Shown here: piece by piece, positions 2,613 to 61,779 of the stretch
Layout: each line of letters opens with the position of its first letter
Position numbering within the stretch: the first letter of the stretch is position 1
IMG/VR virus record: IMGVR_UViG_3300027996_002186
Span: 1 to 64,000 of that record
Direction: 5' to 3' (one strand)
Length of the DNA: 64,000 bases
Program-made: the position numbers and the translations under genes
The notes under the pieces: model-generated
Database searches by the model: none
What the model was told of the DNA's origin: nothing
Seen by the model: only the letters and a program-made list of their open reading frames with translations

Positions 2613-2622
2613 TATATATTAA
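2613..2622 (-). promoter_or_regulatory. TTAATATATA putative late promoter (example)
   Basis: 5 nt upstream of ATG at 2607; motif recurs dozens of times. Confidence 0.6.
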
Positions 2623-2674
2623 AAATAAATACTAGATTTGATATACACAATTTGGCGAAATCATCAGAAATACA

Positions 2675-2706
2675 AAAAGGCCCTGAGTAAAACTCAGAAC
2701 CTTTTT
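2675..2706 (-). terminator. intrinsic terminator after csp gene
   Basis: - strand aaaggttctgagt-ttt-actcagggcctttt hairpin (with G-U pairs) and U tail. Confidence 0.75.
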
Positions 2707-2732
2707 AATTGATTTTTCTAATTGATTTTTAA

Positions 2733-2930
2733 TTAATCAACTAACCCAACATCAACAGCAGTCTTGCCTTTACGACCCTCACCTTCTGTGTATGTTACCT
2801 TATCAGATTCTCTTATCTCCACACCTTCTAATAGTCCTGTTATGTGTACGAAGATATCTTCGCCTGTTTCATCATTATTAATGAATCCGAATCCTTTCGA
2901 ATCATTGAAAAATTTTACTGTTCCTTGCAT
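2733..2930 (-). CDS. cspA: cold-shock domain protein
   Basis: GTVKFFN..KGFGFI (RNP1) and DIFVHIT (RNP2) motifs, 65 aa. Confidence 0.95.
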   Translation of the reverse strand: MQGTVKFFNDSKGFGFINNDETGEDIFVHITGLLEGVEIRESDKVTYTEGEGRKGKTAVDVGLVD

Positions 2931-2979
2931 TATTTATTTATTTATTTTATTCTTTACTCAAAATGAGCTTGTTATTTAC

Positions 2980-3007
2980 ATTATACGTTGTTATTATAAT
3001 TAGTTTA
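2980..3007 (-). promoter_or_regulatory. TAAACT-N16-TATAAT promoter-like element (third class)
   Basis: Same spacing at 15434-15461(+), 42000-42027(-), 47496-47523(+). Confidence 0.5.
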
Positions 3008-3072
3008 ATAATTTATCATTTTTTTACGATACACAATTATAAAATTATAAATAAGTTTTTAATATATACTTT

Positions 3073-3483
3073 ATGAATCATATAAAATCATATAAAATAT
3101 TTGAATCCGAGTTGGGTTATGTTAGTAAACCAATCGATATAAAGTTCGATATAAAGACTGCTAAATTTGATTATAATAGAAATACAAAATATAGACATGG
3201 TATTGATAGGGTTATTAATGATGATGAAATAATTGAAATTGTCGAAAAGGGTATGGAAAAATTAACCATTGATTTGATGAATGATAATTTGGATATTGGT
3301 GATAGATTCGTGTTGAAAGGTGAGGGTTTTGATGGTGATATGTTAAATTTAGTTTGTCAGTTAAATCCTGGTGAGAATTTTTTCACATTGATGATCATAA
3401 CTGCTATGCGTAAAGAGGATTTCACAGGACATAGAAATCAATATATCTTGAATGTAGATACACAACAACATCATTACGAATAA
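3073..3483 (+). CDS. N-terminal-motif hypothetical protein
   Basis: MNHIKSYKIFES; TTAATATATA at 3059-3068. Confidence 0.8.
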   Translation: MNHIKSYKIFESELGYVSKPIDIKFDIKTAKFDYNRNTKYRHGIDRVINDDEIIEIVEKGMEKLTIDLMNDNLDIGDRFVLKGEGFDGDMLNLVCQLNPGENFFTLMIITAMRKEDFTGHRNQYILNVDTQQHHYE

Positions 3484-4313
3484 TGAGATATTTAAATAAA
3501 TATAATATCTATAAAGGTGATTTCTTGTTAGAAAGTTTGAATGAGTCTATTGATGTAGGTTCTTTTACATCTAAAATAAAAAATTATCTAAGTAATTTGA
3601 ATAAGAATCAAATAAAAGAATACTATAAAAAATTCATTGAAAAGGTATCAAAACTACCAAAAACAACAAAAAAGGCTATTTTAATAGGAGTTATACCAAT
3701 ATTTGCGTTAAATCTTAGTTCTGCTGACTTAGAACAATCAAGTGATCCAGTTGTTATAGAGGTTGTTAGTGAAGTAGAAACTTTAGAAGTGCAAGAACCA
3801 GTAGAAGAAATTGTAGAAGATAATTTCAAAAAAGGTTATGATTTTGTTTTAACACAAAACGGGTGGGATTCTATACGAGATGAAGAGAAATTAAGATTAT
3901 ATCCGTATGATATAGGTGATGGTAAAATAACAGTTGGATGGGGACATGCCGAAGATATCACTACATCTAAATATAAGATAGGTAATAAGATAAGTAAAGA
4001 GGAAGCTCAGAAATTATTAAAAGATGATTTGACATTAGCTGCTGATGCTGTTAGGCAAGTTTTCGTGGAGTGGAAAGAGAAGGATATAGATGTTGAAATA
4101 ACACAAGATATGTTTGATGCTTTAGTTTCAATAACATTTAACATTGGTGTTGGTGGTATGAGAAATTCGGACTTTATACAAGACTTAAAGAAAGGAGATT
4201 ATAAAGCTTGTGCTAATAGTATGAGAATACATAAGAGTAATCTATTTGAGAAGTTCCCTGGGTTAGAAACAAGACGAGGTAGAGAAGCTGATATTTACTT
4301 GAAAAATTATTAA
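3483..4313 (+). CDS. GH24 (phage lysozyme) with N-terminal motif extension
   Basis: EEKLRLYPYDIGDGKITVGWGH (E-x8-D-x5-T triad), FDALVSITFNIG, GLETRR..E; N-term MRYLNKY...LLESLNES. Confidence 0.9.
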   Translation: MRYLNKYNIYKGDFLLESLNESIDVGSFTSKIKNYLSNLNKNQIKEYYKKFIEKVSKLPKTTKKAILIGVIPIFALNLSSADLEQSSDPVVIEVVSEVETLEVQEPVEEIVEDNFKKGYDFVLTQNGWDSIRDEEKLRLYPYDIGDGKITVGWGHAEDITTSKYKIGNKISKEEAQKLLKDDLTLAADAVRQVFVEWKEKDIDVEITQDMFDALVSITFNIGVGGMRNSDFIQDLKKGDYKACANSMRIHKSNLFEKFPGLETRRGREADIYLKNY

Positions 4314-4333: not shown

Positions 4334-4615
4334 ATGAAGACGGAAGAAGAATTATCAAAAGAAAGTCAACCACAATATTTCACTTGGTTGTGGAGGAATA
4401 AAAAAACAGAGATATTACTTACCTTTGTTGGTATTGTATCATGTATTTTAACTACACCGATAATACTAGATCCTATGAACGAAAACCCAATTATTGTAAT
4501 GATTTTAGCTTTTATTGCAATATATGGATTTACTGTTGGTATGGCATTACAACCATACACAATATATAAAAAATTAGTTAAGATGAATTATTGGTCACGT
4601 AATTCTCCTTATTAG
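4334..4615 (+). CDS. two-TM membrane protein (holin candidate by position only)
   Basis: Two hydrophobic helices; directly follows lysozyme. Confidence 0.55.
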   Translation: MKTEEELSKESQPQYFTWLWRNKKTEILLTFVGIVSCILTTPIILDPMNENPIIVMILAFIAIYGFTVGMALQPYTIYKKLVKMNYWSRNSPY

Positions 4616-4633
4616 AAATAATATATAGAAAGT

Positions 4634-4930
4634 ATGAAATACTTAAAGACATTTGAAAATTATGGAATAGTAGAATCTGTTTCTTTCAATAGAAAGGATA
4701 AGGCTAGAATACTAACATTAAATGATAGAGCTACTGATGAGGATCACTTAATTAGACTAGCTGTTAATATGGCGAACGCTATTGGTAGAAATGTTGAAAA
4801 AGGAAGTGAGAACGAATATATCTCTGGTAAGAAAGCCTTTCAAAGAGGATTAGCAGCAGAAGATGAGAACTTCCACGAGGTAGCTCAGATATTTTTTGAT
4901 AGAGCAAAAGAATTGGGATTCGAAGAATAA
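4634..4930 (+). CDS. N-terminal-motif hypothetical protein
   Basis: MKYLKTFENYGIVES; TAATATATA at 4619-4627. Confidence 0.8.
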   Translation: MKYLKTFENYGIVESVSFNRKDKARILTLNDRATDEDHLIRLAVNMANAIGRNVEKGSENEYISGKKAFQRGLAAEDENFHEVAQIFFDRAKELGFEE

Positions 4931-6316
4931 TCATATAAATCTATACTTTTGAGAATTATAATTTTTCTCGAATTGTTCTTGTGATAATTCCACACCCCCA
5001 TGAATTGTCATTCCTAAAGTCTTTCCATTTAGAAAGTTTCCGACAGCAGACCTATCACACCCAATATTGAATCCATTTGTAACGCTACTAGTCAATGTAG
5101 TTATAGTTATAGTATCTTCTAATACACCATTAATGTATAATTTAGCGTTTCCATTTTCAACCGCTGAACATCCTATGTGATACCACGTATTTATTACAGG
5201 CGTAGTTGTAGCCGTCAAATTATCATTCACCGAAGCGTTTATTACAGTCGCTCTTAGTAAGTTTGGATTACCCGCATTAATCCTGATTAAAAAGTTTCTA
5301 TTGTTAGCATTATCATTATATTCAGACCGATACTCGCCTAAAAATGCGTTTATATAGATCCATTGCTCAAAACTAAAGGTAGATCCTATATCAGCAACAG
5401 GTAGAATCGGAAAACTTACATATTCGTCCGTGCCATCCATATCCAAAACCCCATCGGTTATGGTTAAACCATTTCGAAGCTCTCCTATCATTGTTGGATC
5501 TACTATATTCTTTATCAGATTACTTCCCCACTTATTAGTAAGTTGATTCGACTTCGTAATTATTTGACTTGACGTGTACACACCTTCTGCTACGAACATT
5601 TCCCCGTAAAATATATTGCCTGATCCCGTTAATGTCGATTGACCGTGACCTAAATAAGTAGCGCCTAAAGTCGCTAAAATAGCAGTTGCAGATGCGTTTA
5701 TTGGTTTAGTTCCATAAGACACACCATCAACAAATAATTCCATTAACTTATTTGATATTGATATTTTCAATGCGTAAATGTGTAAACTATCTATACTTTG
5801 GTCGGGTATTGTCCAAGTCGAAACTTCTTGCGTAGCCGTTCCTTGCCATTTATTAACACTCCTAAAAGTTGTTGATGTCGTGTGATTAATTGTTATTCCG
5901 TTAACTAATGGATTGATTGAAGTTGGCATTGAAAATATATTTCCATTGCTATAATCGAATGTGGAATACATTATAAGTAACTCCAAAATACCATCTGCAC
6001 TATATGAAGATGTTTGCACACCATTAGATGAGGTAACATCGTACCCGACACTTAAATTTCGATTGCTATAGTTCTCGTAAAATATAAACTCTTCGCCTAC
6101 TGCCGAGGTTCCCGTATAGCCATTTCCACTTTGGTCGGGAACTACCAATATATTATCGAGATTATTTAATCCCGTTATCTTAGAAAAATCCCAATGGAGT
6201 TTAATATTTGAATCAACTACATCTGGATAATTGGTTACCACAGATAGTTTATTACCCGTATCAGATTGAAACGTTCCTGAACTTGTTATTGCTGATTTAA
6301 ATCCTCCTGTGCTCAT
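4931..6316 (-). CDS. LamG/concanavalin-like virion fibre protein (two lectin-like domains)
   Basis: DGTDEYV, SFEQWIY, WYHI....KLYINGVL; C-term NYNSQKYRFI. Confidence 0.8.
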   Translation of the reverse strand: MSTGGFKSAITSSGTFQSDTGNKLSVVTNYPDVVDSNIKLHWDFSKITGLNNLDNILVVPDQSGNGYTGTSAVGEEFIFYENYSNRNLSVGYDVTSSNGVQTSSYSADGILELLIMYSTFDYSNGNIFSMPTSINPLVNGITINHTTSTTFRSVNKWQGTATQEVSTWTIPDQSIDSLHIYALKISISNKLMELFVDGVSYGTKPINASATAILATLGATYLGHGQSTLTGSGNIFYGEMFVAEGVYTSSQIITKSNQLTNKWGSNLIKNIVDPTMIGELRNGLTITDGVLDMDGTDEYVSFPILPVADIGSTFSFEQWIYINAFLGEYRSEYNDNANNRNFLIRINAGNPNLLRATVINASVNDNLTATTTPVINTWYHIGCSAVENGNAKLYINGVLEDTITITTLTSSVTNGFNIGCDRSAVGNFLNGKTLGMTIHGGVELSQEQFEKNYNSQKYRFI

Positions 6317-7044
6317 AAGTATCTATGTTTTTGTACTTCGTAATTATATAGTATCTGTTCGGGAGTTAATACTGCACTATGTATAGTTGTTAGACCGAGA
6401 GTTCCTTGAAGTGTATATTGATTAAAGGCATTTAGTTGCAACCTACCTAATACCCATATATTATTTACTAAATCCGTACCGTACTGCGTTATGGGATTAA
6501 TTGAATCGCTAACATCAGCAACCTTAACCCCATTAATAAACATTTCAGCATCCAATACATCTGAGGGTGCAGTATAAACTATGTTCATCCAATCTCCTTG
6601 ATTATAAGGAACTGTTGCGGGAATAGACCCATTACCCGAACCACCTTTTATTAACTGATTAAGGCAATTAACCGACACTTCATTTGATGCTGCTTGTCCA
6701 CTATTTCGACCCATACTTATTACCACAGCACCGCTTGAGCGACTTATGATATATGAACTAAAGATATTTCTTTCTTCTTGAACCCAAGTGGAAAGTGTAT
6801 AAGGTCTATCTGCTGCTCCTAAAGTTATTTGTGCTAATGGACTACTCGCTACATTCACTTGGTCATCGACACCATCAAAAACTATACCTTTGTCAGAGAA
6901 TGTTGTACCATTTTCTAAAAGGAGTTCTCTATGCTCAACAACATCTCTTATAGTAGTAGCGTCTTTACGCATAATTAAATTAGCACCATCAAAAGAGTAC
7001 CTTAGATTGTCCTTTACTATTGATTTACGTGCGAAGTGTCCCAT
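6313..7044 (-). CDS. LamG-like virion protein
   Basis: IVFDGVDDQV, TLSTWV, WMNIVYT, MFINGV; C-term NYEVQKHRYL. Confidence 0.8.
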   Translation of the reverse strand: MGHFARKSIVKDNLRYSFDGANLIMRKDATTIRDVVEHRELLLENGTTFSDKGIVFDGVDDQVNVASSPLAQITLGAADRPYTLSTWVQEERNIFSSYIISRSSGAVVISMGRNSGQAASNEVSVNCLNQLIKGGSGNGSIPATVPYNQGDWMNIVYTAPSDVLDAEMFINGVKVADVSDSINPITQYGTDLVNNIWVLGRLQLNAFNQYTLQGTLGLTTIHSAVLTPEQILYNYEVQKHRYL

Positions 7045-7045
7045 C

Positions 7046-7306
7046 TTATCCTTCTATAAGCCCTATTGGTAATGTCCATTCTACCGTTGCCATTACTGCT
7101 AATATCTCTTCGTGAGTGTATGTAGGTATGGTTGGTGTAATTACTGATACACTACTTGGTATATCTCCCTCCCATTTTAATACAAATTCTGTTTCATCAA
7201 TATTCTTACGAACTGTATCAGCAGATGTCTGTTGGACTTGTGAATAATCTACGTTATTTAATTCAGCTATCGGTGCTATTGCGTATGTCTTATTATTGTG
7301 TGCCAT
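7046..7306 (-). CDS. small conserved phage protein of LamG cassettes
   Basis: VDYSQV.QTS..TVRK..D.T.FVLKW.G; embedded between LamG genes. Confidence 0.7.
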   Translation of the reverse strand: MAHNNKTYAIAPIAELNNVDYSQVQQTSADTVRKNIDETEFVLKWEGDIPSSVSVITPTIPTYTHEEILAVMATVEWTLPIGLIEG

Positions 7307-8726: not shown

Positions 8727-8839
8727 ATCCCGTTATTTATTTTACAATCGACTTAAAATATATAATTGTAATATAGTATATATTAATTTTTTAATAAAAA
8801 ATAGTTTGTGTTTCTAAATAATACGAAAAATAAATAAAA

Positions 8840-10930: not shown

Positions 10931-10956
10931 TGCTCTATATATTAATAACGAATTAG

Positions 10957-11366: not shown

Positions 11367-11434
11367 ACAGATTTGAACAGAAAAAAATCTACAATATCTC
11401 AATAAATAAATAATTTATATTAATATATATAAAT

Positions 11435-11944: not shown

Positions 11945-12149
11945 AAAATAAACCGAGTTCCGATTCAAATATTACTCCAAAAATATATAAGCCAAAAAAT
12001 TGGTCGTTGAGTAGCACTGGATTTATAACAATACCAAATTATTGGATTGAAGGAAGACAACCAGATTTACGTTTAGATATCTACGACATATACTTTCTTA
12101 AAGTGGTAATATTAATTTATGATATGTTTATTTTTAATATATAACTATA

Positions 12150-13054: not shown

Positions 13055-13178
13055 TTAATAAATTTACTGTGTATAATATAATCGACATACACATCAACCA
13101 TATTAAAAACTTGTTAATATTTTCTTTATACTTTTTATACATATCACAAATATAAGGATTATTATTAATATATAACAT

Positions 13179-14828: not shown

Positions 14829-14909
14829 AGTTTATATTTTTTAATTATTACTTTATTTATATACAAATGTAAGGATATTATCATACTAATACAAATTAAT
14901 ATATACTTT

Positions 14910-19289: not shown

Positions 19290-19312
19290 TGTTTATATAT
19301 TATTTAGGTATT

Positions 19313-20020: not shown

Positions 20021-20040
20021 TTTATATATTAATATATAAA
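20021..20040. promoter_or_regulatory. palindromic bidirectional late-promoter motif
   Basis: Perfect 20-bp palindrome TTTATATATTAATATATAAA between divergent ATGs at 20017 and 20043. Confidence 0.7.
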
Positions 20041-21190: not shown

Positions 21191-21270
21191 CCAAATAATT
21201 CATTGGTTAAGTCTTTGTTTTTGTGTGGTAAAGAATAAGATGTTGATAATACAAATTAATATATACAATA

Positions 21271-22668: not shown

Positions 22669-22837
22669 ATTACAAATATAGTAAATTAATTTGAATATAT
22701 AAAGTTTATGTCGGATTTTTTTATGGTACTATCAAATATAAACAAATGATATAAAATAAACAAATGATATATTATTTAATATATAGGTGTGTTAGTTTTG
22801 CTATTTGTGTAATGATATTTAATTTAAAATAAAAGTT

Positions 22838-24934: not shown

Positions 24935-24985
24935 AAGTTATATATTATAATTAATATATAAAGAAATAATAAAAAATATAATTAT

Positions 24986-26180: not shown

Positions 26181-26296
26181 AACTAATTTTTCTTTGCTTT
26201 ATATTTCATTTATACAAATATAGTTATATTATATCAAGAACCATAAAAAGTGTTTAATTATTTAATATATAATTGTATAAAAATCACTACAAAAAC

Positions 26297-27886: not shown

Positions 27887-27948
27887 GTAGTTATATATAA
27901 AGATATACCCTTGTAAATTATTAGACTATTTATTTAATATATAAATAC

Positions 27949-34007: not shown

Positions 34008-34043
34008 AGTGTATATATTATAAAATTTTTATATATTTGTAGG

Positions 34044-35893: not shown

Positions 35894-35927
35894 ATAGATA
35901 TATATTAAAATAAATCTATTTAAATTG

Positions 35928-36114: not shown

Positions 36115-36204
36115 ATTACAAATATAGTGAAAAGTTTTTAATAAAAAATAAAATTTTACATTTTTAATATATAATACTCATATTAGTTAAAATAAAAACA
36201 ATAA

Positions 36205-38631: not shown

Positions 38632-40113
38632 TTATTGACAATCATAACAAGGTCGTTCACCTCTCCCACTACAATCAGAACATTCTATGGTTGAATTACC
38701 ATCACATTCAGTACAATCTACTTTACCCCTAGCATCACAATCCTCACAATCTACATCATGTTCTTCACCATCAGATCCTTCTTCTGTTATAGTTCCTCCA
38801 CCATCACAATTTGAACAATTTTCTGTACCATATCCGTCACATTCTGGACAGTCTCTTTCACCACTACCACCACAATCATAACATTCCACTTCGCCTCCAC
38901 CACCACATCCCTCACATCTATAATGTGAGCCTTCAGTATCTTCTAATATATAACAATTACCACATTCATCTATTGATAGTGTACCATTATCTTTATTCCA
39001 ATATTTCAAAGTGTCTAAGTAAGGATATTTTTCATATTCACCTGGTTTTATATCCACGATTATGTTCAAATTTGTATCATCACCATTAGGATCAATACAA
39101 CTACCATTGGCGTTGGATGCGTTTCCACGTTTTGTATACCAACCATTCTCTTTAGCATAATCCTTAAATAATTGAACATCAGAATCATTGGCTGTGTATA
39201 TTCTATCCATAAATCTTTTACCATCTCTCAATTTCCAAAGTAATGCTCTTCCTAAAATTTTATCTGTATCATCATCTGATTTATAAATAACCAAAGTACA
39301 AACTTCTGGATTAGAAATATAGATATCAAAAAATTCCTCATCAACAGCGGACATACAAGAACTACCTAATACGCCCCTCCTTGTCGAGTAATGTGAATAG
39401 TGATACCAATATCCTATTTTATCACCAGTAACTTCTTCAAATAGTGAAAATTTATCATTAAATTTATCAATTGTTGCTTTATATAAATTAACAAATACTT
39501 CAATATCCTTATCAAGGAATTCTATATCATTAGTTTTAAGTAATGCTCTAATAGCTCTACCTACTTTAACTTCTTGTCTATTCGTTGACCAAATTTTATC
39601 CAATCTATCATCAACCTTTCTAATCTTTTCGGCATTTATGACCAATTCTGTACTTGGGAATTTAACATAAACAAATCTCTTACCCGATTCTTCCGAAACT
39701 GTTTCTTTAATAATTTCTCCTAGTTCATCATTTTCTGGTTTTATCAATTCCTCACCAGGTGTGAATCCTAAAGCATCGAAAATAGTTTTATTTTTATATT
39801 CTCCTCCTTCATTTTTATTAAAAGTTAACCAACCACCATTATTACCAACAAATCTAACCTTAATATTTTCCTCACTCAGTATTTGTTGTGCTCTTCTATC
39901 TGGTATAAATGATACTTTATCATTTTTATCCATTACTATATCAAAATAATTAGACCTAACGTCTAAATCTTTATTCTCAACATCTAAAAGTGATTTGGAT
40001 ACTGGGTTCTCTATTTTTGAAAGAGTGAGTCTAAATTTATCAGAATAAACGACATCCGACTCCAATATTAACTCTAATGACTCATTTATGAAATCAAAAT
40101 ACTTTTTTAACAT
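38632..40113 (-). CDS. N-terminal-motif protein with 8 DnaJ-type CxxCxGxG repeats
   Basis: MLKKYFDFINESLELILES; LGSSCM..GRALLW..FMDRIYT core; paralog of 27949..29415. Confidence 0.85.
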   Translation of the reverse strand: MLKKYFDFINESLELILESDVVYSDKFRLTLSKIENPVSKSLLDVENKDLDVRSNYFDIVMDKNDKVSFIPDRRAQQILSEENIKVRFVGNNGGWLTFNKNEGGEYKNKTIFDALGFTPGEELIKPENDELGEIIKETVSEESGKRFVYVKFPSTELVINAEKIRKVDDRLDKIWSTNRQEVKVGRAIRALLKTNDIEFLDKDIEVFVNLYKATIDKFNDKFSLFEEVTGDKIGYWYHYSHYSTRRGVLGSSCMSAVDEEFFDIYISNPEVCTLVIYKSDDDTDKILGRALLWKLRDGKRFMDRIYTANDSDVQLFKDYAKENGWYTKRGNASNANGSCIDPNGDDTNLNIIVDIKPGEYEKYPYLDTLKYWNKDNGTLSIDECGNCYILEDTEGSHYRCEGCGGGGEVECYDCGGSGERDCPECDGYGTENCSNCDGGGTITEEGSDGEEHDVDCEDCDARGKVDCTECDGNSTIECSDCSGRGERPCYDCQ

Positions 40114-40151
40114 AATTATATTTCAGTTTTTATATATATTAAATACTATTT

Positions 40152-40433: not shown

Positions 40434-40526
40434 TCTATATCTTTTTTCTCATTATATAGGAAAACATAAACTTGAGCAGATTATTGAATTGAAAAGTTAA
40501 TATATACAGAAAGTATTAATTTTATT

Positions 40527-41140: not shown

Positions 41141-41157
41141 TTTAATATATATCTTAT

Positions 41158-42057: not shown

Positions 42058-42252
42058 TTATGTAACTGAGACTTTTCTTATTTCAATGTATTCACTTTCA
42101 TATCCATCATATAAGTCTTTCCTATCCAAAGTCCAACGGCTCACACCCAATTGCTCATTACCATAATGAGCGTATAATTTTCCGAGGTTAACAAACACCT
42201 CTACTCTGTTCGTCAATTTCCAACGAATATAAATTATAGTTTGACTTCTCAT
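42058..42252 (-). CDS. hypothetical protein
   Basis: 64-aa ORF. Confidence 0.6.
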   Translation of the reverse strand: MRSQTIIYIRWKLTNRVEVFVNLGKLYAHYGNEQLGVSRWTLDRKDLYDGYESEYIEIRKVSVT

Positions 42253-42276
42253 ATATATTATAAAAAGAAGAGAGAA

Positions 42277-43056: not shown

Positions 43057-43122
43057 ATTACAAATATAAGTAAAATTTACAGAAGGCAAAAATTATTTAT
43101 AGTATATCATGATGTTACATGA

Positions 43123-43810: not shown

Positions 43811-43965
43811 AATATTTCTTTTAATTTTCTACTTCGAAAAATGTTACTTTCTATGAAATAACAAGTAAGGTACTTATAAGTGTGTTCATAATATAATATA
43901 CAGAATTAATATATAATATTATAATTATAGTTGATAATTATAGATTAGTTTAAATAAGGAACAAC

Positions 43966-46517: not shown

Positions 46518-46527
46518 TAACTATATA

Positions 46528-46748
46528 TTATTTTCCTTTGAAGAAATTCCAAAATCCACCGACTTTCTTTTTAGGATATTCAACTGCTTGTGGTTTGATT
46601 GGTTCTTCTGGTTTATTTAACTCTCCATTACTATACCACATATTTCTCTTATCTTTAGATAGTCTTGGTATTCTGGGGAATCGGTGTTGACTCCATTTTT
46701 ATTTAATATCGATTTAGCGTATGCTATATTTTCATTAATAATACTCAC
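46528..46748 (-). pseudogene. internally deleted/frameshifted late gene relic
   Basis: TTTATATATA-caac-GTG: MSIINENIAYAKSIL...KIREICGIVMES* then out-of-frame tail ELNKPEEPIK...GGFWNFFKGK*. Confidence 0.5.
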
Positions 46749-47266: not shown

Positions 47267-47527
47267 AATAATTAATTTATTTTTAAGTTATATTATTAAT
47301 TCTTTTTTTGTTGTTATAATTGGTTAATTAATAACCATTTTTTATATTTAAGTGTGTTACTTAGAAAGTCATCTATTTCATATTCAACTGAATCTGTTGG
47401 TACCTCAATTATTAATATATTATCTTTTATAATCATAATTCTTAAATGTTTGTATATTTATATATTTTTCTTAAATGTTTTTGTTAATTATATATTAAAC
47501 TTTTTGTTATTATTAATTAGAATTAAT

Positions 47528-50648: not shown

Positions 50649-50698
50649 ATTATTTTTCATATCAGTATAATAATTTTCTTTATTCTTTATATATTAAA

Positions 50699-52544: not shown

Positions 52545-52725
52545 AATAGTATATATTAAAAATAAATATTCTAATAAGTTCGAAGAGAATGTTATATTTC
52601 AATATATATGATTATGAAATCTTGTAACAAATGTGAATTTTATAAAATGACACCAATAAGTATAATAAAGTCTTTAGATAACCTATTATACACTAAAGAT
52701 AATTCAAAATTAAATAAAATATAAT

Positions 52726-53115: not shown

Positions 53116-53183
53116 ATAAATAAAGATGTATAATTATTAGTAGAGATTACTAATAATTAATATATACTAAAAAGATATTATAT

Positions 53184-55565: not shown

Positions 55566-57683
55566 ATGGCTAAAGAACCGGATGTATCAGTAAGAGTTAG
55601 AGCAATTAATACAAATCTAGATGAGAGGCACTCAGGGTTGGGTGATATAGAGGTTCGTGTTATTCATGAGGGTGGTAAAAAATATAAAGTCGCTTGGATT
55701 CCTAAGGGTGGATACGGATATGTTACGGAATTTAAAAAGAAAGGCAAATATGAATTATACACTGCTGAAAACTTTATACATGCTGTGATTTATCAAGCAA
55801 CTAAGATTAAACTTGGAGGAAATTCTTCTATCGTTGATGTTAATGATTATAAATTATTTGGTGATGATCAATATTATGAGATAATACAAAATCCCTTTGA
55901 GCAAAATCCCCCATTGTATAGATCTTTTGGTAATGATCCATATTATTTAAATAATCAAACTAAAGTCAGTATATTTTGGTTTATAGGTGATAAACAATCT
56001 ATATCTAGATTGGAGTTTAGTAAAACTTATGCACAAACTGAAGCAGTTAACTCAGTTAATGCGGTAACTGGGAATTTCGAACTTCGGGCGACATTTGGAG
56101 GTACAGAGGGTGTGTGGTCAGGTGGTGCTCTTTGGAGTCTTCCTAATGGTCGAGAGAAATTACGAAATACCAGAGATACAAATGGTGAGGGTATATTTAG
56201 TGAGGGTAATACATATGATGACAAGGCTGCTTGGGGTCAAATTTATGGATTATATATTGAATCTGATAATACATATGAAGACCCGTTAAATATTATAGAA
56301 TATAAGAAATGTGATATAAAGAAATATGTCTTGATAGAGCATAAAGAATCCGGTGAGAAATTCACACTTGAGGAGAATATGACAGATTTCGTGGGCCCCT
56401 TCACAGGAGAAATAGAAAAACAATATGGGTTTGAAATAGATGGGGAAATACTCGATGTGGAAATACTCGAGTCTATCTTGACTATTTGGAAAAAAAAGGT
56501 TGCTGATTATGATGCACTTGATGTTTGTTATAAGGACTATGGGAATACCAAAGGTAAGGATTTACCTAAACACTTTTCTTGTAATGAGGTTGAGTATAGA
56601 AGTCCTATACAAATAGAACCAAAAGAACCGGAACCTACACCAAACGAAGAATCTGTACAAACACAGGGCACACCAAAGATTAAACTGAGTGTTGTTTTAC
56701 CGGAAGATTTCGAGTTGAAGGTTAAAGAAGATTTAGATGAGGTTAAAGTTTATATAGGTGATCCACCATCAGATGGTTTTGTTTTCCAGGATGATTTTGA
56801 TAATCTAGAAGAGTTGGATCCTGAATATATGGAGTCTGATTTTGAAGGAAGTCAAGAGGTGATAAATACACCAGAAGAGGTTGAAGAAAATATGGAGGTT
56901 GCTAAAGTTGATAATACTGGACCTCCTTCCGCTGTAATATCAACTGGTGATTTTACGTGCTCTGAGCCCCGTCAATCATCCGATAGCACCTTTCAGAATA
57001 ATAAAGTACCTTATTATTTCCAATATGATACTAGATGGAATTATGTCATATTTGGATTATCGAAGGAAAAACAGTTTATAGAGGATGAAATCTTACCAGC
57101 GCTTTCAAGAGGTTCTTCAGGTAAGCTATATACTGTTAATTTTAAAGGAAGTAGTTATAAGATACAATGTGATCATAGAAGTGGGGATAAAGGGTATTCC
57201 GGAATTGGAGGTGGTGGGTGTGGTCCTACTAGTTTGGCTATGGTTAGTAATTACTGGGCAAAAAGGAATGGTAAAGGAGTTTATACATCCCCTGTAAAAA
57301 CAGCAAAAATGATATGTGATCTAGCTATCAGTGCTCGACCTGGTCCACCATGTAGCGGTACTGCCATGCGTACAGTAGAAAAAAAATGTAATGACACACT
57401 ATCTTCGTTATTCGGTTTTAAATTACGGAAAGTCAGTAAGGAGCAAGCGATTTCTAGAATTAAAAGTGGAAATCCAGTTATATGGCAATGTAGGCAAGGA
57501 TCAGGTTACAACAAAACGGGTGGTAAGAAGAAGTATGGTGGTCATTATATGGTGATATCCGAATTTAGAGATGGTAAATTTTGGGTAAGTGATCCTGGTA
57601 ATAAATCCAAAAAGGGTATTGTATATTTAGATTCCACGTTGAGTACTTGTAAAGGTTATTACTTTGAATGTTATAAGGCATAA
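55566..57683 (+). CDS. virion protein with C-terminal C39-like cysteine peptidase
   Basis: YYFQYD.RW, GCGPTSLAMV, GHYMVI, VSDPG (Q, C, H, D). Confidence 0.8.
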   Translation: MAKEPDVSVRVRAINTNLDERHSGLGDIEVRVIHEGGKKYKVAWIPKGGYGYVTEFKKKGKYELYTAENFIHAVIYQATKIKLGGNSSIVDVNDYKLFGDDQYYEIIQNPFEQNPPLYRSFGNDPYYLNNQTKVSIFWFIGDKQSISRLEFSKTYAQTEAVNSVNAVTGNFELRATFGGTEGVWSGGALWSLPNGREKLRNTRDTNGEGIFSEGNTYDDKAAWGQIYGLYIESDNTYEDPLNIIEYKKCDIKKYVLIEHKESGEKFTLEENMTDFVGPFTGEIEKQYGFEIDGEILDVEILESILTIWKKKVADYDALDVCYKDYGNTKGKDLPKHFSCNEVEYRSPIQIEPKEPEPTPNEESVQTQGTPKIKLSVVLPEDFELKVKEDLDEVKVYIGDPPSDGFVFQDDFDNLEELDPEYMESDFEGSQEVINTPEEVEENMEVAKVDNTGPPSAVISTGDFTCSEPRQSSDSTFQNNKVPYYFQYDTRWNYVIFGLSKEKQFIEDEILPALSRGSSGKLYTVNFKGSSYKIQCDHRSGDKGYSGIGGGGCGPTSLAMVSNYWAKRNGKGVYTSPVKTAKMICDLAISARPGPPCSGTAMRTVEKKCNDTLSSLFGFKLRKVSKEQAISRIKSGNPVIWQCRQGSGYNKTGGKKKYGGHYMVISEFRDGKFWVSDPGNKSKKGIVYLDSTLSTCKGYYFECYKA

Positions 57684-57997: not shown

Positions 57998-58018
57998 TTT
58001 AAGTATTTTTAATTATTT

Positions 58019-58273
58019 TTACCAAGTTCTGATAGAACTTAAAGGTCCATTTACTGGGTTAGGAGCTGCATCCACAAGTATTAATAAATTATCTAAAGCT
58101 AATTCATATGTTGATCCAGTAGCGGATAAATTAACTTCCGGCATACCAGCAACGAAACAAGCAGGTCCATATGTGTTTACTGATGATGTTACACCACCAA
58201 CATTTACGAGTTGTTGTCCACTAAGATGAGATGGACTATAAGATATGTTTATTAGATATGAAGGATTTACCAT
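58019..58273 (-). CDS. small protein, tandem duplicate copy 1
   Basis: Near-identical to copy 2 except the central loop; TTAATATATA at 58295-58304. Confidence 0.8.
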   Translation of the reverse strand: MVNPSYLINISYSPSHLSGQQLVNVGGVTSSVNTYGPACFVAGMPEVNLSATGSTYELALDNLLILVDAAPNPVNGPLSSIRTW

Positions 58274-58311
58274 TTTAATTAGTATATTTTTAATTATATA
58301 TTAATTTTCAA

Positions 58312-59856
58312 TTATATAAATTTATCGAAATCACTTTTTCTGATAAGTGTGTATGTAAAGGTATCTTTATTTGTAACTTTTACTTGATTTTCACAATTAT
58401 TCATAAACTGTTTAAATTGTCTAGATTTCTTAAATACCTGACAGCCTTTCGACCAGTTATAAACATTATTAGAACTACCACCTTTACTAGATCTGTGTAT
58501 ATTTATACCAAATGATCCTTCTTCTGTACTAGCTTTGAAGTTATATGCTCCATCTTTATCATTTCTGTGTACTATACTCTTGGCGTATTTTAGACATTTA
58601 TGATCTTTTTTACCCTGGTGTAATCCTATCTTATATTGATCGATATATTGACCAAGTGCTAACACAGCAACATTTTTCGGTAACTTCTTAGTCTTCGGTA
58701 TAAAACCTGGAGTTGTAGTTACATTATATTCCATCGATATCCATGTGTTATTCACATTTTTAAAGAAAACATAAATAGTATCATCAAATTTATTCGAAAC
58801 GGTTCCATCATCTTTAGTTCTAATACCAACTATATTCATCATACCAACTTGGTCATAAACCACATAACCCTTTGATTGCATAAACCTTACCCACTTATTT
58901 ACTTCCTCATTAGATTCTGTTGATGTCAGATCTATTGGTGGATTTGTGTTTTCTGCTGGTACATCGTCCGGTTCTCCATCCGTTGCTGGTGCAACATAAT
59001 CTTCATCATATTCTTGCTTAGGACCATCTAGAGGTTTGAAATCTTCATCAGTTTTAGCTGTCATATCATTTTCAATTCCTCCTACTTCTTCTGGACCCTT
59101 TGTTGAATCCCAAGCATCCCCTACTTGTGGATCATCTTGTCTTTCAGGGAAAGAGTGGCATCTAACAGCAGTTACTTTATTATTATCTACTATATTAACG
59201 TGATGTGATAGAAAGACCGGATCTCTCAAAGATTTATATTTTAATAGAACTGATATCATTTCTGGATTTGGTACAACCGGAGCTCCCAAGTTTCCTAAAT
59301 AAGGACCGGCTTTGCTACCCAATAGGTTATCCACAAACTCATCAAACCAATCCATCCAATGATTACCTAATATAGCTTGTTGTGAAGCACCAGCATCCCC
59401 AATATTAACATCTCTATTATTATCTTTAAGATTTAAATCAATTGTATCTTCTGTTATATTAATATTATTATACTTATAGTCTATTTTAAGTCCTTCATCA
59501 TCATTAACATAAATTTGTGTTTTGTGATCAAAAATCAAAGACTTCATCGATTTATAATTATCACCATCTAAAGATTCTAACTTCTTTTCTAAATTTACAT
59601 TGTAGTGATCTGAGAATATGAATTCTGGTTTATATTCATCACCTTGGTCAAAAACAACAATTAAAACTTTACCCTTTTCTGGTACATTAAATTCATTACC
59701 ATTTATATCTTTCCATGGTGTAGCCCAGGGTAAATCCTCTAGCTTCATTTCATCAAAAATATCCATAACCCTAACTTTAACTCTCCCGAGTTTCTTAGGA
59801 TCTGCATTGTCTTCGACAACACCTATATATGTTTTGTTAGCTTCTACTTTATTCAT
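58312..59856 (-). CDS. gp5/VgrG-like baseplate hub/spike protein (OB-fold) with C-terminal putative peptidoglycan-acting domain
   Basis: YIGVVEDN.DP.KLGRVKVRV...LPWA.P...VPEKG; C-term GINIH...WSKGCQVF (YkuD-like H/C pair). Confidence 0.8.
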   Translation of the reverse strand: MNKVEANKTYIGVVEDNADPKKLGRVKVRVMDIFDEMKLEDLPWATPWKDINGNEFNVPEKGKVLIVVFDQGDEYKPEFIFSDHYNVNLEKKLESLDGDNYKSMKSLIFDHKTQIYVNDDEGLKIDYKYNNINITEDTIDLNLKDNNRDVNIGDAGASQQAILGNHWMDWFDEFVDNLLGSKAGPYLGNLGAPVVPNPEMISVLLKYKSLRDPVFLSHHVNIVDNNKVTAVRCHSFPERQDDPQVGDAWDSTKGPEEVGGIENDMTAKTDEDFKPLDGPKQEYDEDYVAPATDGEPDDVPAENTNPPIDLTSTESNEEVNKWVRFMQSKGYVVYDQVGMMNIVGIRTKDDGTVSNKFDDTIYVFFKNVNNTWISMEYNVTTTPGFIPKTKKLPKNVAVLALGQYIDQYKIGLHQGKKDHKCLKYAKSIVHRNDKDGAYNFKASTEEGSFGINIHRSSKGGSSNNVYNWSKGCQVFKKSRQFKQFMNNCENQVKVTNKDTFTYTLIRKSDFDKFI

Positions 59857-59863
59857 TATATTC

Positions 59864-61720
59864 TTATCTTCTTTGACCGCCATTAGAGAATCCACCACCA
59901 ACTGCACCACCCAATGAGTCTCCTAAAAACCCAACTAAATCACCCCTTACATCATAGAAAAATCTTTGTGACACATTACTACCAGCATTCAATAATGAAC
60001 CTTGTTCTCCTGGGCCAAGCTCATATATATTTTTGGGTGGTGGTATCGTACCTCCCTGTAATGATATTGCTGCTTTATTTAATGTTCTGGCTAATAATTG
60101 TGCTTTTGTGTTTATAACACCTTGTAATTCTTTTTTAGCAGATGATACCAATCTATCCTTAGCTTTTTTTGCCGCAGCTTTAGCCTTTCCTTTAGATGCT
60201 TTCTTATCTCCTTCTAAACTTTCCCCATCACTCGGTGGATCATCAGCGGTTAGGACTTCAGGAGCCAGTATAATTTCTGTTGTTCCTAATTTATTTATAC
60301 TTTTTAAAACAAATGGTGATTCAACACCATTTTCTCTTAACTTATTTTTACCAACTGTGAAGAAATTTGGTATTGATGTGTCTCCAACTGATTGTGTTCC
60401 TCTTGCTCCTGGGTTACCAATTTTCCAAATAGCACCACTATCATAACCAACATAGCTACCAAAACCATCACCGGTTGGTACAAACTTTTCAAATTTAACG
60501 GCTGAGTATTTATAATCAAATGTTACTGGTGTTGTGCCTTGCGCAGCAATACTACCCATGTCTATCTGAGCTGGGTGAGGTAGTTGGTCAAAAAAGAATT
60601 GACATTCTCTTAGAGAATAAACATATCTAGATACATTATCCTTTATTATTTCTAAATTACCAGTCTCTACTGCTTTTCTAACCCTGTTAAAATTTCTACA
60701 TTCCGAAACTACTATATCACAATTAAATCTCAATAGATTCTCAGGAATCATTCCCTTACCATTTGGTTTAGACCAATATAATAATTTATAAAGATGTGTT
60801 AAAGTACCAACACTCAAAGAAACATCTTCCAAAAAGTCTAATGTTATGACATCTTTTCTATAATCAGTAATATATTTTAATGTTCCTGGTTTATTACTCT
60901 CTACTAAGAAGTTTAGACCTGTTATTTTTTGTATATAATAACCCATATAAGCTTTTTTACCCAATTGAAAAATTGATTTCGAGTTATCAAAACTAGCTGA
61001 GTTTACACCACTATTACTCATTGTTGTTTGTTCTGGATCAATCCTTAATGTTCCTTTTGTTTTGAAAAATTTCAAAAATTGTTGCTTAAAATCCTCATAT
61101 ACTGGTATCCTAGCGGCCATTTCATTTATTCCCTTATATTGATTTAAAAAATCTATCACAGATCCGTTTAATAATGGTGATGATATACCATCAATTATTA
61201 AATCAAATCCATACATAACCGGATCATTATTTTCGAATGGTGTTGCTTTGAATTGACTCAATCTTAAATCAGAAGCACCTTCTGAATTTTCAATTGGTGT
61301 TAACCCATCAATTATTTGTAAACCGTGTTTAAAATAATCCGTTTTATTATCATCAAATATCATATAATGATCTCTCATGGAATAAGGGATATCTTCTAAA
61401 TCTGCACTTGATTTCGGTAAATCTTTACTTTCGTTAAATCTATCCGTAGTATCTAAATCAATTAAACCATTTGGTGTTATTTTCTGACCTAACCAATCTT
61501 CATATTCATATTGTCCATATTTAATTTTAACAGCTTCTTGCTGCTTCCCAAAAACAGACAATGATGGTTGTATCAAAACTGGTGGTAAGAATCCAGAAGT
61601 TTTTGAAAAATCGGGATTTACTAATGTTTGTGGCCAAGGATTACTCACAAAAGCAATAATACTTGATGCTGAGTTAGATATTTTCTCTTTTAAATCTGTG
61701 ATTTTGTCGAATACTCCCAT
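59864..61720 (-). CDS. putative tail/baseplate structural protein
   Basis: 618-aa ORF directly upstream of gp5-like gene; TTAATATATA at 61728-61737. Confidence 0.65.
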   Translation of the reverse strand: MGVFDKITDLKEKISNSASSIIAFVSNPWPQTLVNPDFSKTSGFLPPVLIQPSLSVFGKQQEAVKIKYGQYEYEDWLGQKITPNGLIDLDTTDRFNESKDLPKSSADLEDIPYSMRDHYMIFDDNKTDYFKHGLQIIDGLTPIENSEGASDLRLSQFKATPFENNDPVMYGFDLIIDGISSPLLNGSVIDFLNQYKGINEMAARIPVYEDFKQQFLKFFKTKGTLRIDPEQTTMSNSGVNSASFDNSKSIFQLGKKAYMGYYIQKITGLNFLVESNKPGTLKYITDYRKDVITLDFLEDVSLSVGTLTHLYKLLYWSKPNGKGMIPENLLRFNCDIVVSECRNFNRVRKAVETGNLEIIKDNVSRYVYSLRECQFFFDQLPHPAQIDMGSIAAQGTTPVTFDYKYSAVKFEKFVPTGDGFGSYVGYDSGAIWKIGNPGARGTQSVGDTSIPNFFTVGKNKLRENGVESPFVLKSINKLGTTEIILAPEVLTADDPPSDGESLEGDKKASKGKAKAAAKKAKDRLVSSAKKELQGVINTKAQLLARTLNKAAISLQGGTIPPPKNIYELGPGEQGSLLNAGSNVSQRFFYDVRGDLVGFLGDSLGGAVGGGFSNGGQRR

Positions 61721-61779
61721 AATGATTTATATATTAAAAATATCCTACTCTAATAGAAGTTTGTTGAAAATTAAGGTGA

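What the first reader, a model, noticed from the sequence alone, without database searches (positions are those of the whole stretch)
2613..61737. TTAATATATA: putative late promoter coupling the motif-protein genes to the tail genes
Seen: (T)TAATATATA lies directly upstream of most N-terminal-motif genes (2613-, 3059, 4619, 24939-, 24951, 27934, 41142 etc.) and of structural operons (8777- LamG, 53157 baseplate, 58295-, 61728-), oriented with the gene. Known: T4 late promoters are a single -10 element, TATAAATA, read by gp55. Inference: this is the analogous late promoter, so many cargo genes are stand-alone promoter+tag+domain cassettes.
Basis: partly seen in the sequence, partly recalled or inferred. 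Interest (0 to 1): 0.7.

Follow-up and report, generated by a model that had tools for sequence, protein, structure and literature searches.

The report
Late promoter of a marine megaphage
TAATATATA is a real, strongly enriched, gene-oriented signal that behaves like the single-element late promoter of a roughly 0.5-0.6 Mb marine phage of Bacteroidota, probably read by the phage's own T4 gp55-like sigma factor and often placed so close to the ATG that the mRNA would have no leader.

Summary
TAATATATA occurs 36 times in the window against 8.7 expected. It occurs 164 times in the 483-kb virus record, where it and TTAATATAT are the commonest 9-mers. 143 of the 164 sites lie in the 7.8% of the genome that is intergenic, and 124 genes carry the motif in sense within 45 nt of the start, against 24 in antisense.

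The motif-to-ATG spacing is bimodal: 4-6 nt or 19-25 nt. A second motif class I found, TTTG-N19-TATATTTG, shows the same bimodal spacing. That class matches the Bacteroidota sigma-A -33/-7 promoter, whose distance to the transcription start is known. TAATATATA therefore sits at about -13 to -5, like a -10 element, and about half of its transcripts would be leaderless.

The phage has no RNA polymerase detectable by Pfam. It encodes a 121-aa gp55-family sigma factor whose profile hits PDB gp55 at E 2e-7.

The ATATATA core precedes portal, capsid, protease, terminase, sheath, tube and baseplate-hub genes. It is also kept upstream of capsid, portal and tube orthologues in relatives that have diverged to 35-50% protein identity. 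All N-terminally tagged genes that can be assigned to a promoter sit in units driven by this motif, and none in host-type units.

Late timing, the sigma assignment and the exact start sites are inferred. This is a new variant of the T4-type late promoter.

The parts
1332..1340 (-). P site; spacer 5 to ATG of 1153-1326 (57 aa)
2613..2621 (-). P site; spacer 5 to the second ATG (2607) of the 1363-2613 gene, giving the tagged start MKHLKRFNE
3060..3068 (+). P site; spacer 4 to 3073-3483 (tag MNHIKSYKIFES); unit continues with 3483-4313 and 4334-4615
4619..4627 (+). P site; spacer 6 to 4634-4930 (tag MKYLKTFENY)
8777..8785 (-). P site; 50 nt upstream of 8049-8726. Heads a minus-strand unit of 7315-8034, 7046-7306, 6313-7044 (virion structural protein, phrog_8510) and 4931-6316 (LamG)
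10936..10944 (-). P site followed after 5 nt by a 5-codon ORF (MKYIS-stop), probably a decayed tag cassette
11421..11429 (+). P site; spacer 5 to 11435-11944 (MLLKYKLFLEKK)
12135..12143 (+). P site; spacer 6 to 12150-12704 (tag MKHLIRYNES)
13166..13174 (+). P site; spacer 4 to 13179-13610 (tag MKHLKRINE); 13607-14026 follows
14897..14905 (+). P site; spacer 4 to an ATG at 14910 that opens a 46-codon ORF ending at 15050
19294..19302 (-). P site; spacer 4 to 18855-19289 (tag MEYIKTYELF)
20023..20031 (-). P site; spacer 5 to 19313-20017. Overlaps the divergent site at 20030+ by 2 nt
20030..20038 (+). P site; spacer 4 to 20043-20489 (tag MKYLRTYKIFES); 20495-21190 follows
21257..21265 (+). P site; spacer 5 to 21271-21477
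22777..22785 (+). P site; 52 nt upstream of 22838-23092 (weak assignment)
24939..24947 (-). P site; spacer 4 to 24665-24934 (tag MLHLKLFEEF). Divergent partner of 24952+
24952..24960 (+). P site; spacer 25 to 24986-25372 (MKYLKKFFED); leadered class
26263..26271 (+). P site; spacer 25 to 26297-26512
27935..27943 (+). P site; spacer 5 to 27949-29415 (488 aa). Its N-terminus MKSYTEFLLE is close to the T4 capsid-targeting sequence MKTYQEFIAE
   Evidence: PMC8442874
31494..31502 (+). P site; spacer 4 to 31507-31707 (tag MKNIKTFENY)
34012..34020 (-). P site; spacer 4 to 33462-34007 (tag MKFVKTFESF)
35899..35907 (-). P site; spacer 5 to the GTG start (35893) of the 34880-35893 ORF. The ATG at spacer 3 is followed at once by a stop
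36165..36173 (+). P site; spacer 31 to 36205-36594
40133..40141 (-). P site; spacer 19 to 38632-40113 (493 aa)
40498..40506 (+). P site; spacer 20 to 40527-40907
41143..41151 (+). P site; spacer 6 to 41158-41412 (tag MRYLRTYKKF)
42252..42260 (-). P site abutting an ATG (42252) of a 64-codon ORF; doubtful gene
43907..43915 (+). P site; 50 nt upstream of 43966-44499 (MKHIKRFDE)
46522..46530 (-). P site; spacer 4 to 45996-46517 (tag MKYLKNYNN); the tagged gene 45598-45999 follows in the same unit
47489..47497 (-). P site; 52 nt upstream of a 40-codon ORF (weak assignment)
50688..50696 (-). P site; spacer 27 to 48648-50660 (670 aa; weak DHH and winged-helix hits)
52550..52558 (-). P site; spacer 5 to 51150-52544 (464 aa); the tagged gene 50699-51142 follows
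53158..53166 (+). P site; spacer 17 to 53184-53495. Heads a plus-strand unit running to 57683 that includes the Peptidase_C39_2 protein 55566-57683. A baseplate function was not confirmed
58295..58303 (-). P site; spacer 21 to 58019-58273
61728..61736 (-). P site; spacer 7 to 59864-61720 (618 aa), followed by the baseplate hub 58312-59910 (Phage_base_V, phrog_430)
38944..38952 (+). Exact match inside the minus-strand gene 38632-40113 with no ORF downstream; probably a chance match, not a promoter
43061..43090 (-). Contrast class H: host-type promoter TTTG-N18-TATATTTG, 4 nt from the ATG of 42277-43056 (leaderless geometry)
   Evidence: PMC6847099
23866..23896 (-). Contrast class H: TTTG-N19-TATCTTTG, 4 nt from the ATG of 23553-23861
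14864..14895 (-). Contrast class H: TTTG-N20-TACATTTG, 35 nt from the ATG of 14625-14828

Best explanation
TAATATATA (working core ATATATA, preferred form T-TAATATATA) is the -10-type element of a phage-specific promoter class that needs no -35 element. The phage has no RNA polymerase of its own, so host core polymerase must be redirected. The most likely reader is the phage's 121-aa gp55-family sigma factor, as at T4 late promoters (TATAAATA, -13 to -6). The class drives about 125 genes with the exact motif and about 200 when variants are counted. These include the virion genes and essentially all genes for proteins with the N-terminal MK(Y/H)(L/I)Kx(F/Y)(N/E)E tag, so both sets are switched on together, most likely late. 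In about half of the sites the motif ends 4-6 nt before the ATG, which puts the A of the start codon at the predicted +1 and makes the mRNA leaderless. In the other half there is an A-rich, Shine-Dalgarno-free leader of about 15-25 nt. Shown: the enrichment, orientation, geometry, gene content, conservation, and presence of the gp55 homologue. Inferred: which sigma reads the motif, the late timing, the exact start sites, and the leaderless translation.
For: 1. Statistics and strand bias are strong.

2. The geometry can be calibrated inside the genome. A second motif class, TTTG-N17-21-TAnnTTTG, matches the Bacteroidota sigma-A -33/-7 consensus. In Flavobacterium johnsoniae that element spans T-12 to G-5, with 4-5 nt to the start (PMC6847099). 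In this phage it shows the same two spacings to the ATG, 3-6 nt or 15-36 nt. TAATATATA has modes at 4-5 nt and 19-25 nt. It therefore occupies about -13 to -5.

3. In leadered sites, positions +5 to +7 after the motif are 69-77% A. This is exactly where the A of the ATG sits in the short-spacer class.

4. There is no -35-like signal and no Shine-Dalgarno signal.

5. No multisubunit polymerase was found. A gp55-family sigma factor is present, and its own gene lacks the motif in this phage and in four relatives.

6. In the -13 to -6 frame the core differs from T4's ATAAATA at one position. The variant TAATAAATA is also enriched in sense, 13 against 3 (PMC1524935).

7. Gene content fits a late class. 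The motif precedes portal, peptidase, tube and the tail-fibre unit (exact form), sheath, major capsid protein, protease and terminase (TT or CA variants), and the baseplate-hub unit in the window. DNA polymerase, three helicases, nuclease and SbcC lack it, and the ligase has a host-type promoter.

8. The ATATATA core lies 19-53 nt upstream of the capsid, portal and tube orthologues in LR756502, LR756504, LR756501 and LR756500, and of the Lak-C1 portal gene. That is 13 of the 14 orthologues located (14 of 15 loci examined; the Lak-C1 capsid gene lacks it), against about 4 expected from the per-gene frequency in those genomes.

9. Of the tagged genes, 76 of 83 lie in motif-driven units and 0 of 83 in host-type units.

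10. RNA gives limited support. In four metatranscriptomes the tail-tube region has no RNA for about 750 nt upstream of the motif, and the leftmost contig starts 4 nt after it.
Against: - No true transcription-start or time-course data exist. The contig evidence is a single contig at about 6x depth.
- At gene 104442-105392 the contigs run through a GAATATATA variant.
- At the capsid gene the contigs run through the promoter from the upstream gene.
- UvsX (exact motif) and the ribonucleotide reductase large subunit (CA variant) also carry the element, so the class may not be strictly late.
- No gp45-type clamp was found by Pfam in either the 483-kb or the 634-kb record. gp33 was not searched for.
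- Two ECF-like sigma factors are also encoded and cannot be formally excluded as readers.
- In distant relatives (LR756501, Lak-C1, pT24) the 8-mer is not globally over-represented against its reversed control.
- Gene starts come from my own crude caller.
Confidence: 0.72

Rival explanations
1. It is a phage promoter, but read by a different factor: one of the two phage ECF-like sigma factors (G000:272913-273521 or 471487-472086) or a host alternative sigma factor. Alternatively it marks a middle or general class rather than a late class.
For: Two r2+r4 sigma factors are encoded, and one sits in a unit with a host-type promoter, so it is probably made early. UvsX and the ribonucleotide reductase carry the element. 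With about 200 sites it is the dominant class. No gp45 homologue was found.
Against: Sigma factors with region 4 normally need a -35 element, and none is present. The motif is one substitution from the gp55 consensus at the same position. The gp55 homologue and the ATATATA core upstream of late orthologues are kept together across the clade. All identified virion genes carry the element, whereas most replication genes do not.
Confidence: 0.17
2. The primary role is as a cassette boundary. The conserved promoter plus tag-coding start acts as a short homology that lets accessory genes be shuffled by recombination, as proposed for the T-even internal-protein loci (from my own knowledge). On this reading the promoter activity is real but secondary.
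For: Many tagged genes are single-gene cassettes with their own copy (45 of 83). A decayed copy exists at 10936-, consisting of the motif followed by a 5-codon remnant. Back-to-back overlapping copies occur at 20023-/20030+ and 24939-/24952+.
Against: The shared DNA is only about 10 nt. The tag codons vary synonymously (CTA, CTT, CTC, TTA and TTG for Leu), so the conservation is at protein level rather than DNA level. The motif also precedes untagged core virion genes and is conserved there across relatives.
Confidence: 0.06
3. It is not a transcription signal. Instead it is an AT-rich translation-initiation enhancer or a by-product of AT-rich intergenic composition.
For: The genome is 29.6% GC, intergenic DNA is 22% GC, and the region upstream of starts is A-rich and lacks a Shine-Dalgarno signal.
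Against: The site count is 134 against 24 expected from a second-order model of the same intergenic DNA. It is the top of 126 same-composition words (124 against a median of 7), with a 5:1 strand bias. Two discrete spacings match those of a bona fide promoter class. The distance to the ATG varies from 19 to 53 nt in orthologues. A variant copy precedes a non-coding RNA.
Confidence: 0.03

Closest known systems
T4-type late promoters (TATAAATA at -13 to -6) read by gp55 with gp33 and the gp45 clamp
   Same: Both are a single A/T-only -10-type element with no -35. The inferred position is the same, and the core differs at one base (ATATATA against ATAAATA). A gp55-family sigma factor is encoded. 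The element precedes head and tail genes, and early genes use host-type promoters (PMC1524935).
   Different: The consensus is TAATATATA. The host is Bacteroidota, with no Shine-Dalgarno signal. About half of the sites abut the ATG, giving leaderless geometry, whereas T4 late mRNAs have leaders with ribosome-binding sites (own knowledge). The sigma factor is shorter, 121 aa against 185. No gp45-family clamp was detected, and gp33 was not examined.
Bacteroidota sigma-A promoters (-33 TTTG / -7 TAnnTTTG)
   Same: The position relative to the start is the same, and in this phage the two-mode spacing to the ATG is the same (PMC6847099).
   Different: The sequence differs: there is no TTTG and no -33 element. 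The gene set is disjoint from the tagged and virion genes. This is the phage's other, presumably early, promoter class.
T4 internal-protein genes with the capsid-targeting sequence (MKTYQEFIAE)
   Same: Both are diverse small proteins that share only a roughly 10-residue N-terminal tag and are expressed with head genes. The window protein 27949-29415 starts MKSYTEFLLE. A head-maturation protease is encoded at G000:135766-137907 (PMC3012670).
   Different: There are about 80 tagged genes here, against a handful in T4. Packaging and cleavage are untested, and the tag resemblance is by eye only.
Leaderless mRNAs of Actinobacteria, Deinococcus and archaea; poxvirus late promoters (TAAATG) that overlap the start codon (own knowledge)
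   Same: The -10-type element sits at a fixed short distance from the ATG, so transcription would begin at or next to the start codon.
   Different: Here this occurs in a phage of a phylum whose own transcripts are mostly leadered (87% have more than 10 nt, PMC6847099), and it occurs in both of the phage's promoter classes. It has not been shown experimentally.

Membership tests
T4-type (gp55-dependent) late transcription system | A gp55-family sigma factor (region-2-like only, no region 4) is encoded by the phage | tested here: met
   The 121-aa ORF at G000:126163-126528 matches phrog_234 at E 1.9e-7. It has only a weak Sigma70_r2 hit and no region 4. A profile of 9 homologues hits PDB 7d7c_F gp55 at E 2e-7 over residues 4-133. 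Homologues in XacN1 and Xoo-sp13 are annotated as late sigma factors.
T4-type (gp55-dependent) late transcription system | The promoter is a lone A/T-rich -10 element resembling TATAAATA at -13 to -6, with no -35 | tested here: met
   There is no upstream conserved element except a T at -1 of the motif and a weak AAW. The spacer modes place the last A at -5 or -6. The core is one mismatch from ATAAATA. All of this is in silico.
T4-type (gp55-dependent) late transcription system | The element is found upstream of virion (late) genes and not of early replication genes | tested here: met
   About 10 of 10 identified structural genes or units carry it, against 3-4 of 13 DNA-metabolism genes, counting loose variants. 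It is conserved upstream of capsid, portal and tube orthologues. The exceptions are UvsX and the ribonucleotide reductase large subunit.
T4-type (gp55-dependent) late transcription system | A sliding clamp (gp45) acts as activator | tested here: inconclusive
   Pfam PF09116 and PF02916 give no hit in the 483-kb record, and PF09116 gives none in the 634-kb LR745206. A divergent or different clamp is not excluded.
T4-type (gp55-dependent) late transcription system | A gp33 co-activator is present | not tested
   I had no family accession to hand. Iyer et al. report gp33 in group 2 jumbo phages in general (PMC7824862).
T4-type (gp55-dependent) late transcription system | Transcription starts about 6 nt downstream of the motif and occurs late in infection | tested here: inconclusive
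   One RNA contig starts 4 nt after the motif at the tube gene with no RNA upstream. Two other sites are uninformative or show read-through. There is no time course, and the host is uncultured.
Leaderless mRNA | The 5' end lies at, or within a few nt of, the A of the start codon | not testable with these tools
   This is inferred from geometry only. The spacer is 4-6 nt in 57 exact sites, identical to the host-type class, whose TSS distance is known. Only assembled contigs were available, not read starts.
Bacteroidota sigma-A -33/-7 promoter | TAnnTTTG with TTTG about 19 nt upstream | tested here: not met
   TAATATATA has no TTTG and no -33 partner. The sigma-A type exists separately in the genome.

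The most novel reading that the evidence does not exclude
A megaphage runs about a third of its genes from one gp55-type, -10-only promoter that is fused to the start codon. This creates about 60-100 leaderless 'promoter-AUG-tag-domain' cassettes. On this reading the roughly 80 tagged proteins are a very large, fast-evolving set of capsid-packaged (injected) proteins, analogous to T4 internal proteins but an order of magnitude more numerous. Leaderless initiation, possibly helped by the phage's own ribosomal protein bS21, would give late phage messages privileged translation in a host that normally uses leadered mRNAs without Shine-Dalgarno sequences.
Probability: 0.3. Interest if true: 0.72.

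Novelty: new variant of a known kind. Interest (0 to 1): 0.52.

Why it matters
The Lak/Mahaphage clade holds the largest known phage genomes. It has no cultured member, and as far as my searches went it has no described regulatory code.

A two-class promoter map gives a sequence-only way to sort about 600 mostly unannotated genes into early and late sets. The two classes are the host-type TTTG/TAnnTTTG promoter and the phage-type TAATATATA promoter. The map also corrects start codons and flags the roughly 80 tagged proteins as probable virion contents.

The leaderless geometry in both classes would be an unusual translation strategy for a Bacteroidota system. It is directly testable from existing raw metatranscriptome reads.

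Tried and rejected
- Third-order Markov over-representation of 8-mers absorbed the motif and was uninformative.
- Whole-genome counts of AATATATA against the reversed word in Lak-C1, LR756501, pT24, XacN1 and PAU showed no excess. The reversed word is a poor control, and the test says little.
- A search for a third, G/C-containing motif upstream of genes with neither promoter class found nothing convincing. It turned up only TATATTGT or TATCTTGT variants of the host-type element.
- Single-sequence phmmer of the 121-aa protein against the PDB found nothing. The family profile was needed.
- Pfam searches for RNA polymerase beta and beta-prime domains (RNA_pol_Rpb2_6 and RNA_pol_Rpb1_2) and for the gp45 clamp were negative.
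- RNA contigs at the capsid gene could not give a start site, because they read through from the protease gene.
- ARAGORN and Rfam did not recognise the abundant small RNA.
- PHROG and Pfam scans left most large proteins unannotated, including 53184-57683.
- I considered an NCLDV or poxvirus-like origin because the promoter abuts the ATG. I rejected it because the record has phage terminase, portal, sheath, tube and HK97-type capsid genes.

Full report
WHAT THE WINDOW IS. The window is the first 64 kb of a 483,262-bp IMG/VR virus record with 29.6% GC. A gp55-like gene from this record is 100% identical to one in LR745206.1, a 634,780-bp 'uncultured phage'. It is 93% identical to its counterpart in LR756502, 59% in LR756504, 48% in the 735-kb LR756501, and 41% in the Prevotella Lak phages. 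These are the Mahaphage clade of Al-Shayeb et al., predicted to infect Bacteroidetes (PMC7162821). The record therefore lacks about 150 kb of the full genome. The phage is common in marine metagenomes and metatranscriptomes. The standard genetic code fits: 620 crude gene calls give 92% coding.

THE OBSERVATION. TAATATATA occurs 36 times in the window, against 8.7 +/- 2.8 in shuffles. It occurs 164 times in the record, where TTAATATAT and TAATATATA are the two commonest 9-mers.
- 143 of the 164 sites are intergenic, although only 7.8% of the genome is intergenic.
- Against a second-order Markov model trained on the intergenic DNA itself, the count is 134 observed against 24.0 +/- 4.8.
- 124 genes carry the motif in sense within 45 nt of the start, against 24 in antisense.
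- It ranks first among all 126 words of the same composition, whose median is 7.
- In the window, 32 of 36 sites have a same-strand gene start within 60 nt.

ANATOMY. Outside the nine bases, only a T just upstream (74-82%) and a weak AAW 16-18 nt upstream are conserved. There is no -35-like element. One-mismatch variants are far rarer than the exact word. NNATATATA variants (TT 38, AA 22, AT 16, CA 6) do show the same spacing pattern, so the working core is ATATATA. The distance from the motif to the ATG is bimodal: 4-6 nt for 57 genes and 19-25 nt for 46 genes with the exact motif. Upstream regions have no Shine-Dalgarno signal. G is depleted and A is enriched, as in Bacteroidota (PMC6847099).

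A SECOND PROMOTER CLASS CALIBRATES THE FIRST. Among genes without the motif I found TTTG-N17-21-TA(T/C)(A/C)TTTG, most often TATATTTG, at about 55 sites. This is the Bacteroidota sigma-A -33/-7 consensus. In Flavobacterium johnsoniae the -7 element spans T-12 to G-5, and the start lies 4-5 nt after it (PMC6847099).

In this phage the host-type element lies either 3-6 nt or 15-36 nt from the ATG. With a 4-nt spacer, the A of the ATG is exactly +1. TAATATATA shows the same two modes, so it occupies about -13 to -5, the position of a -10/-7 element. In leadered sites, positions +5 to +7 after the motif are 69-77% A. That is the same place as the A of the ATG in the short-spacer class, and it fits an initiating A.

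A ribosome-binding element would not sit at 19-53 nt in one orthologue and 4 nt in another gene. Its spacing would also not mirror that of a known promoter.

WHO READS IT. Pfam finds no beta or beta-prime polymerase domains, so host core polymerase must be used. Three sigma-like genes exist.
- Two are ECF-like, with regions 2 and 4.
- The third is a 121-aa protein at G000:126163-126528. It matches phrog_234 'late sigma transcription factor' and has no region 4.

A profile built from nine homologues has T4 gp55 (PDB 7d7c_F) as its top hit, at E 2e-7 over residues 4-133. Those homologues include the annotated late sigma factors of XacN1 and Xoo-sp13. Iyer et al. had already noted a 'minimal sigma' in group 2 jumbo phages, a group that includes Lak (PMC7824862).

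T4 late promoters are TATAAATA at -13 to -6 (PMC1524935). In that frame the present core, ATATATA, differs from ATAAATA at one position. The T4-like variant TAATAAATA is itself enriched in sense, 13 against 3. The sigma gene lacks the motif upstream in this phage and in four relatives, as expected for a factor that must be made before its regulon. One ECF-like sigma gene lies downstream of the ligase gene, which has a host-type promoter.

WHICH GENES. The following carry the element:
- Exact motif: portal (27-nt spacer), a peptidase next to the capsid gene (24), tail tube (48), and the tail-fibre unit (20).
- Variants: sheath and major capsid protein (TTATATATA), head protease and large terminase (CAATATATA), and a virion structural protein (AAATATATA at 4 nt).

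In the window:
- The 61728- site heads the unit containing the baseplate hub 58312-59910 (Phage_base_V, phrog_430).
- The 8777- site heads a five-gene unit with a virion structural protein (6313-7044) and the LamG protein (4931-6316).
- The 53158+ site heads a unit ending in a Peptidase_C39_2 protein. I could not confirm 'baseplate' for that unit.

Both DNA polymerase pieces, two of the three helicases, DnaB, nuclease, SbcC and the HNH endonuclease lack the element, and the third helicase (66454) has only a loose TTATATATA variant. The ligase has the host-type promoter. UvsX (exact motif) and the ribonucleotide reductase (CA variant) are exceptions.

CONSERVATION. In 40-kb samples, AATATATA upstream of genes is 23 sense against 6 antisense in LR756502, and 8 against 0 in LR756504, both with the same two spacings. 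The signal is weaker in LR756501, LR756500 and Lak-C1.

The ATATATA core lies 19-53 nt upstream of the ATG of the capsid, portal and tube orthologues in LR756502, LR756504, LR756501 and LR756500, and upstream of the Lak-C1 portal gene. The proteins are only 28-78% identical, and the flanking DNA cannot be aligned. That is 13 of the 14 orthologues located (14 of 15 loci examined; the Lak-C1 capsid gene lacks it), against about 4 expected from the per-gene frequency in those genomes. Global over-representation of the word is limited to the window's phage and its nearer relatives.

TAGGED GENES. About 72-83 proteins, depending on the pattern used, begin M-K-(Y/H)-(L/I)-K-x-(F/Y)-(N/E)-E or a close variant. 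Leucine codons vary synonymously, so the conservation is at protein level.
- 45 of 83 have their own ATATATA element.
- 76 of 83 lie in a same-strand run headed by one.
- None lies in a host-type unit, against 79 of 537 untagged genes.

The tag resembles the T4 capsid-targeting sequence MKTYQEFIAE. That sequence directs the otherwise unrelated internal proteins into the prohead and is then cut off (PMC8442874; PMC3012670). Window protein 27949-29415 starts MKSYTEFLLE. A head-maturation protease is encoded at G000:135766-137907. Head contents are thus a better analogy than tail cargo, but this rests on resemblance only.

RNA EVIDENCE. Four marine metatranscriptomes hold phage RNA. The capsid ORF is covered at 7-22x while neighbouring genes are near zero, so this is RNA and not DNA carry-over.
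- At the tail-tube gene (G000:103511-104131) no RNA is seen for about 750 nt upstream of the exact motif (L019:3736-3744). The leftmost contig starts at 3748, 4 nt after the motif and 1 nt before the A that the geometry predicts as +1.
- At the capsid gene the contigs read through from the protease gene.
- At gene 104442-105392 the contigs run over a GAATATATA variant to 12 nt upstream of it.

Only assembled contigs were available, so this is weak support, not start-site mapping.

VERDICT. The interpretation as a gp55-type late promoter is supported by every test that could be run in silico. What remains inferred is the reader of the motif, the timing, and the leaderless translation. It is a new variant of a known kind: a T4-type late promoter with an altered consensus, in the largest phage clade known, on a Bacteroidota host. 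It is frequently fused to the start codon and is paired with a host-type early class that shows the same leaderless habit.

Noticed in passing
window 43061-43090(-), 23866-23896(-), 14864-14895(-), 22733-22764(-), and about 55 sites genome-wide: There is a second promoter class, TTTG-N17-21-TA(T/C)(A/C)TTTG, identical to the Bacteroidota sigma-A -33/-7 consensus. It is often only 4 nt from the ATG, which gives leaderless geometry. It drives the NAD-ligase unit and never drives tagged genes. It is a probable early class and an independent pointer to a Bacteroidota host.
   Followed up: yes
G000:142147-142537 (L021:4255-4645), outside the window: A non-coding RNA of about 375 nt is the most abundant phage transcript in four metatranscriptomes (27-30x, above the capsid mRNA). 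It is preceded by TTATATATA inside a 22-nt copy of the capsid-gene leader. The fold pairs the 5' GGGGGUG with the 3' CAUCUCC next to a hairpin, forming a tRNA-like end with a G3:U pair. It contains a short ORF ending in two stop codons. ARAGORN and Rfam do not recognise it. LR756502 has a homologue at 76% identity. It may be a divergent tmRNA.
   Followed up: partly
window 27949-29415(+); tagged genes throughout, e.g. 3073, 4634, 12150, 13179, 20043, 31507, 41158: The N-terminal tag resembles the T4 capsid-targeting sequence (MKSYTEFLLE against MKTYQEFIAE). This suggests the roughly 80 tagged proteins are packaged head proteins processed by the head protease, rather than tail cargo.
   Followed up: partly
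window 10936-10944(-): The motif is followed after 5 nt by ATG AAG TAT ATA AGT TGA (MKYIS-stop). This looks like the stump of a decayed tag cassette.
   Followed up: no
G000:272913-273521(+) and 471487-472086(+): Two ECF-like sigma factors (regions 2 and 4) are encoded in addition to the gp55-like one. I found no promoter motif for them. They may drive a middle class.
   Followed up: partly
G000:237927-238121(+): The phage encodes ribosomal protein bS21 (PF01165, E 3e-12). No IF3 was found.
   Followed up: partly
G000:76001-77209(-) and 171954-173492(+): The DNA polymerase appears to be split into two genes about 95 kb apart. One matches profile positions 15-495 of phrog_262 and the other matches positions 568-839.
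   Followed up: no
whole record: The IMG/VR record (483 kb, rated 98% complete) carries a gp55-like gene 100% identical to that of the curated 634,780-bp genome LR745206.1. About 150 kb is therefore missing, and absences in this record are weak evidence. Motif positions are not strictly collinear between the two records.
   Followed up: partly
L019:5764-5792 (G000 about 105482-105510), outside the window: A clear intrinsic terminator hairpin followed by a T-run sits directly after the sheath gene. A similar hairpin sits directly upstream of the portal promoter. Units seem to be insulated by terminators.
   Followed up: no
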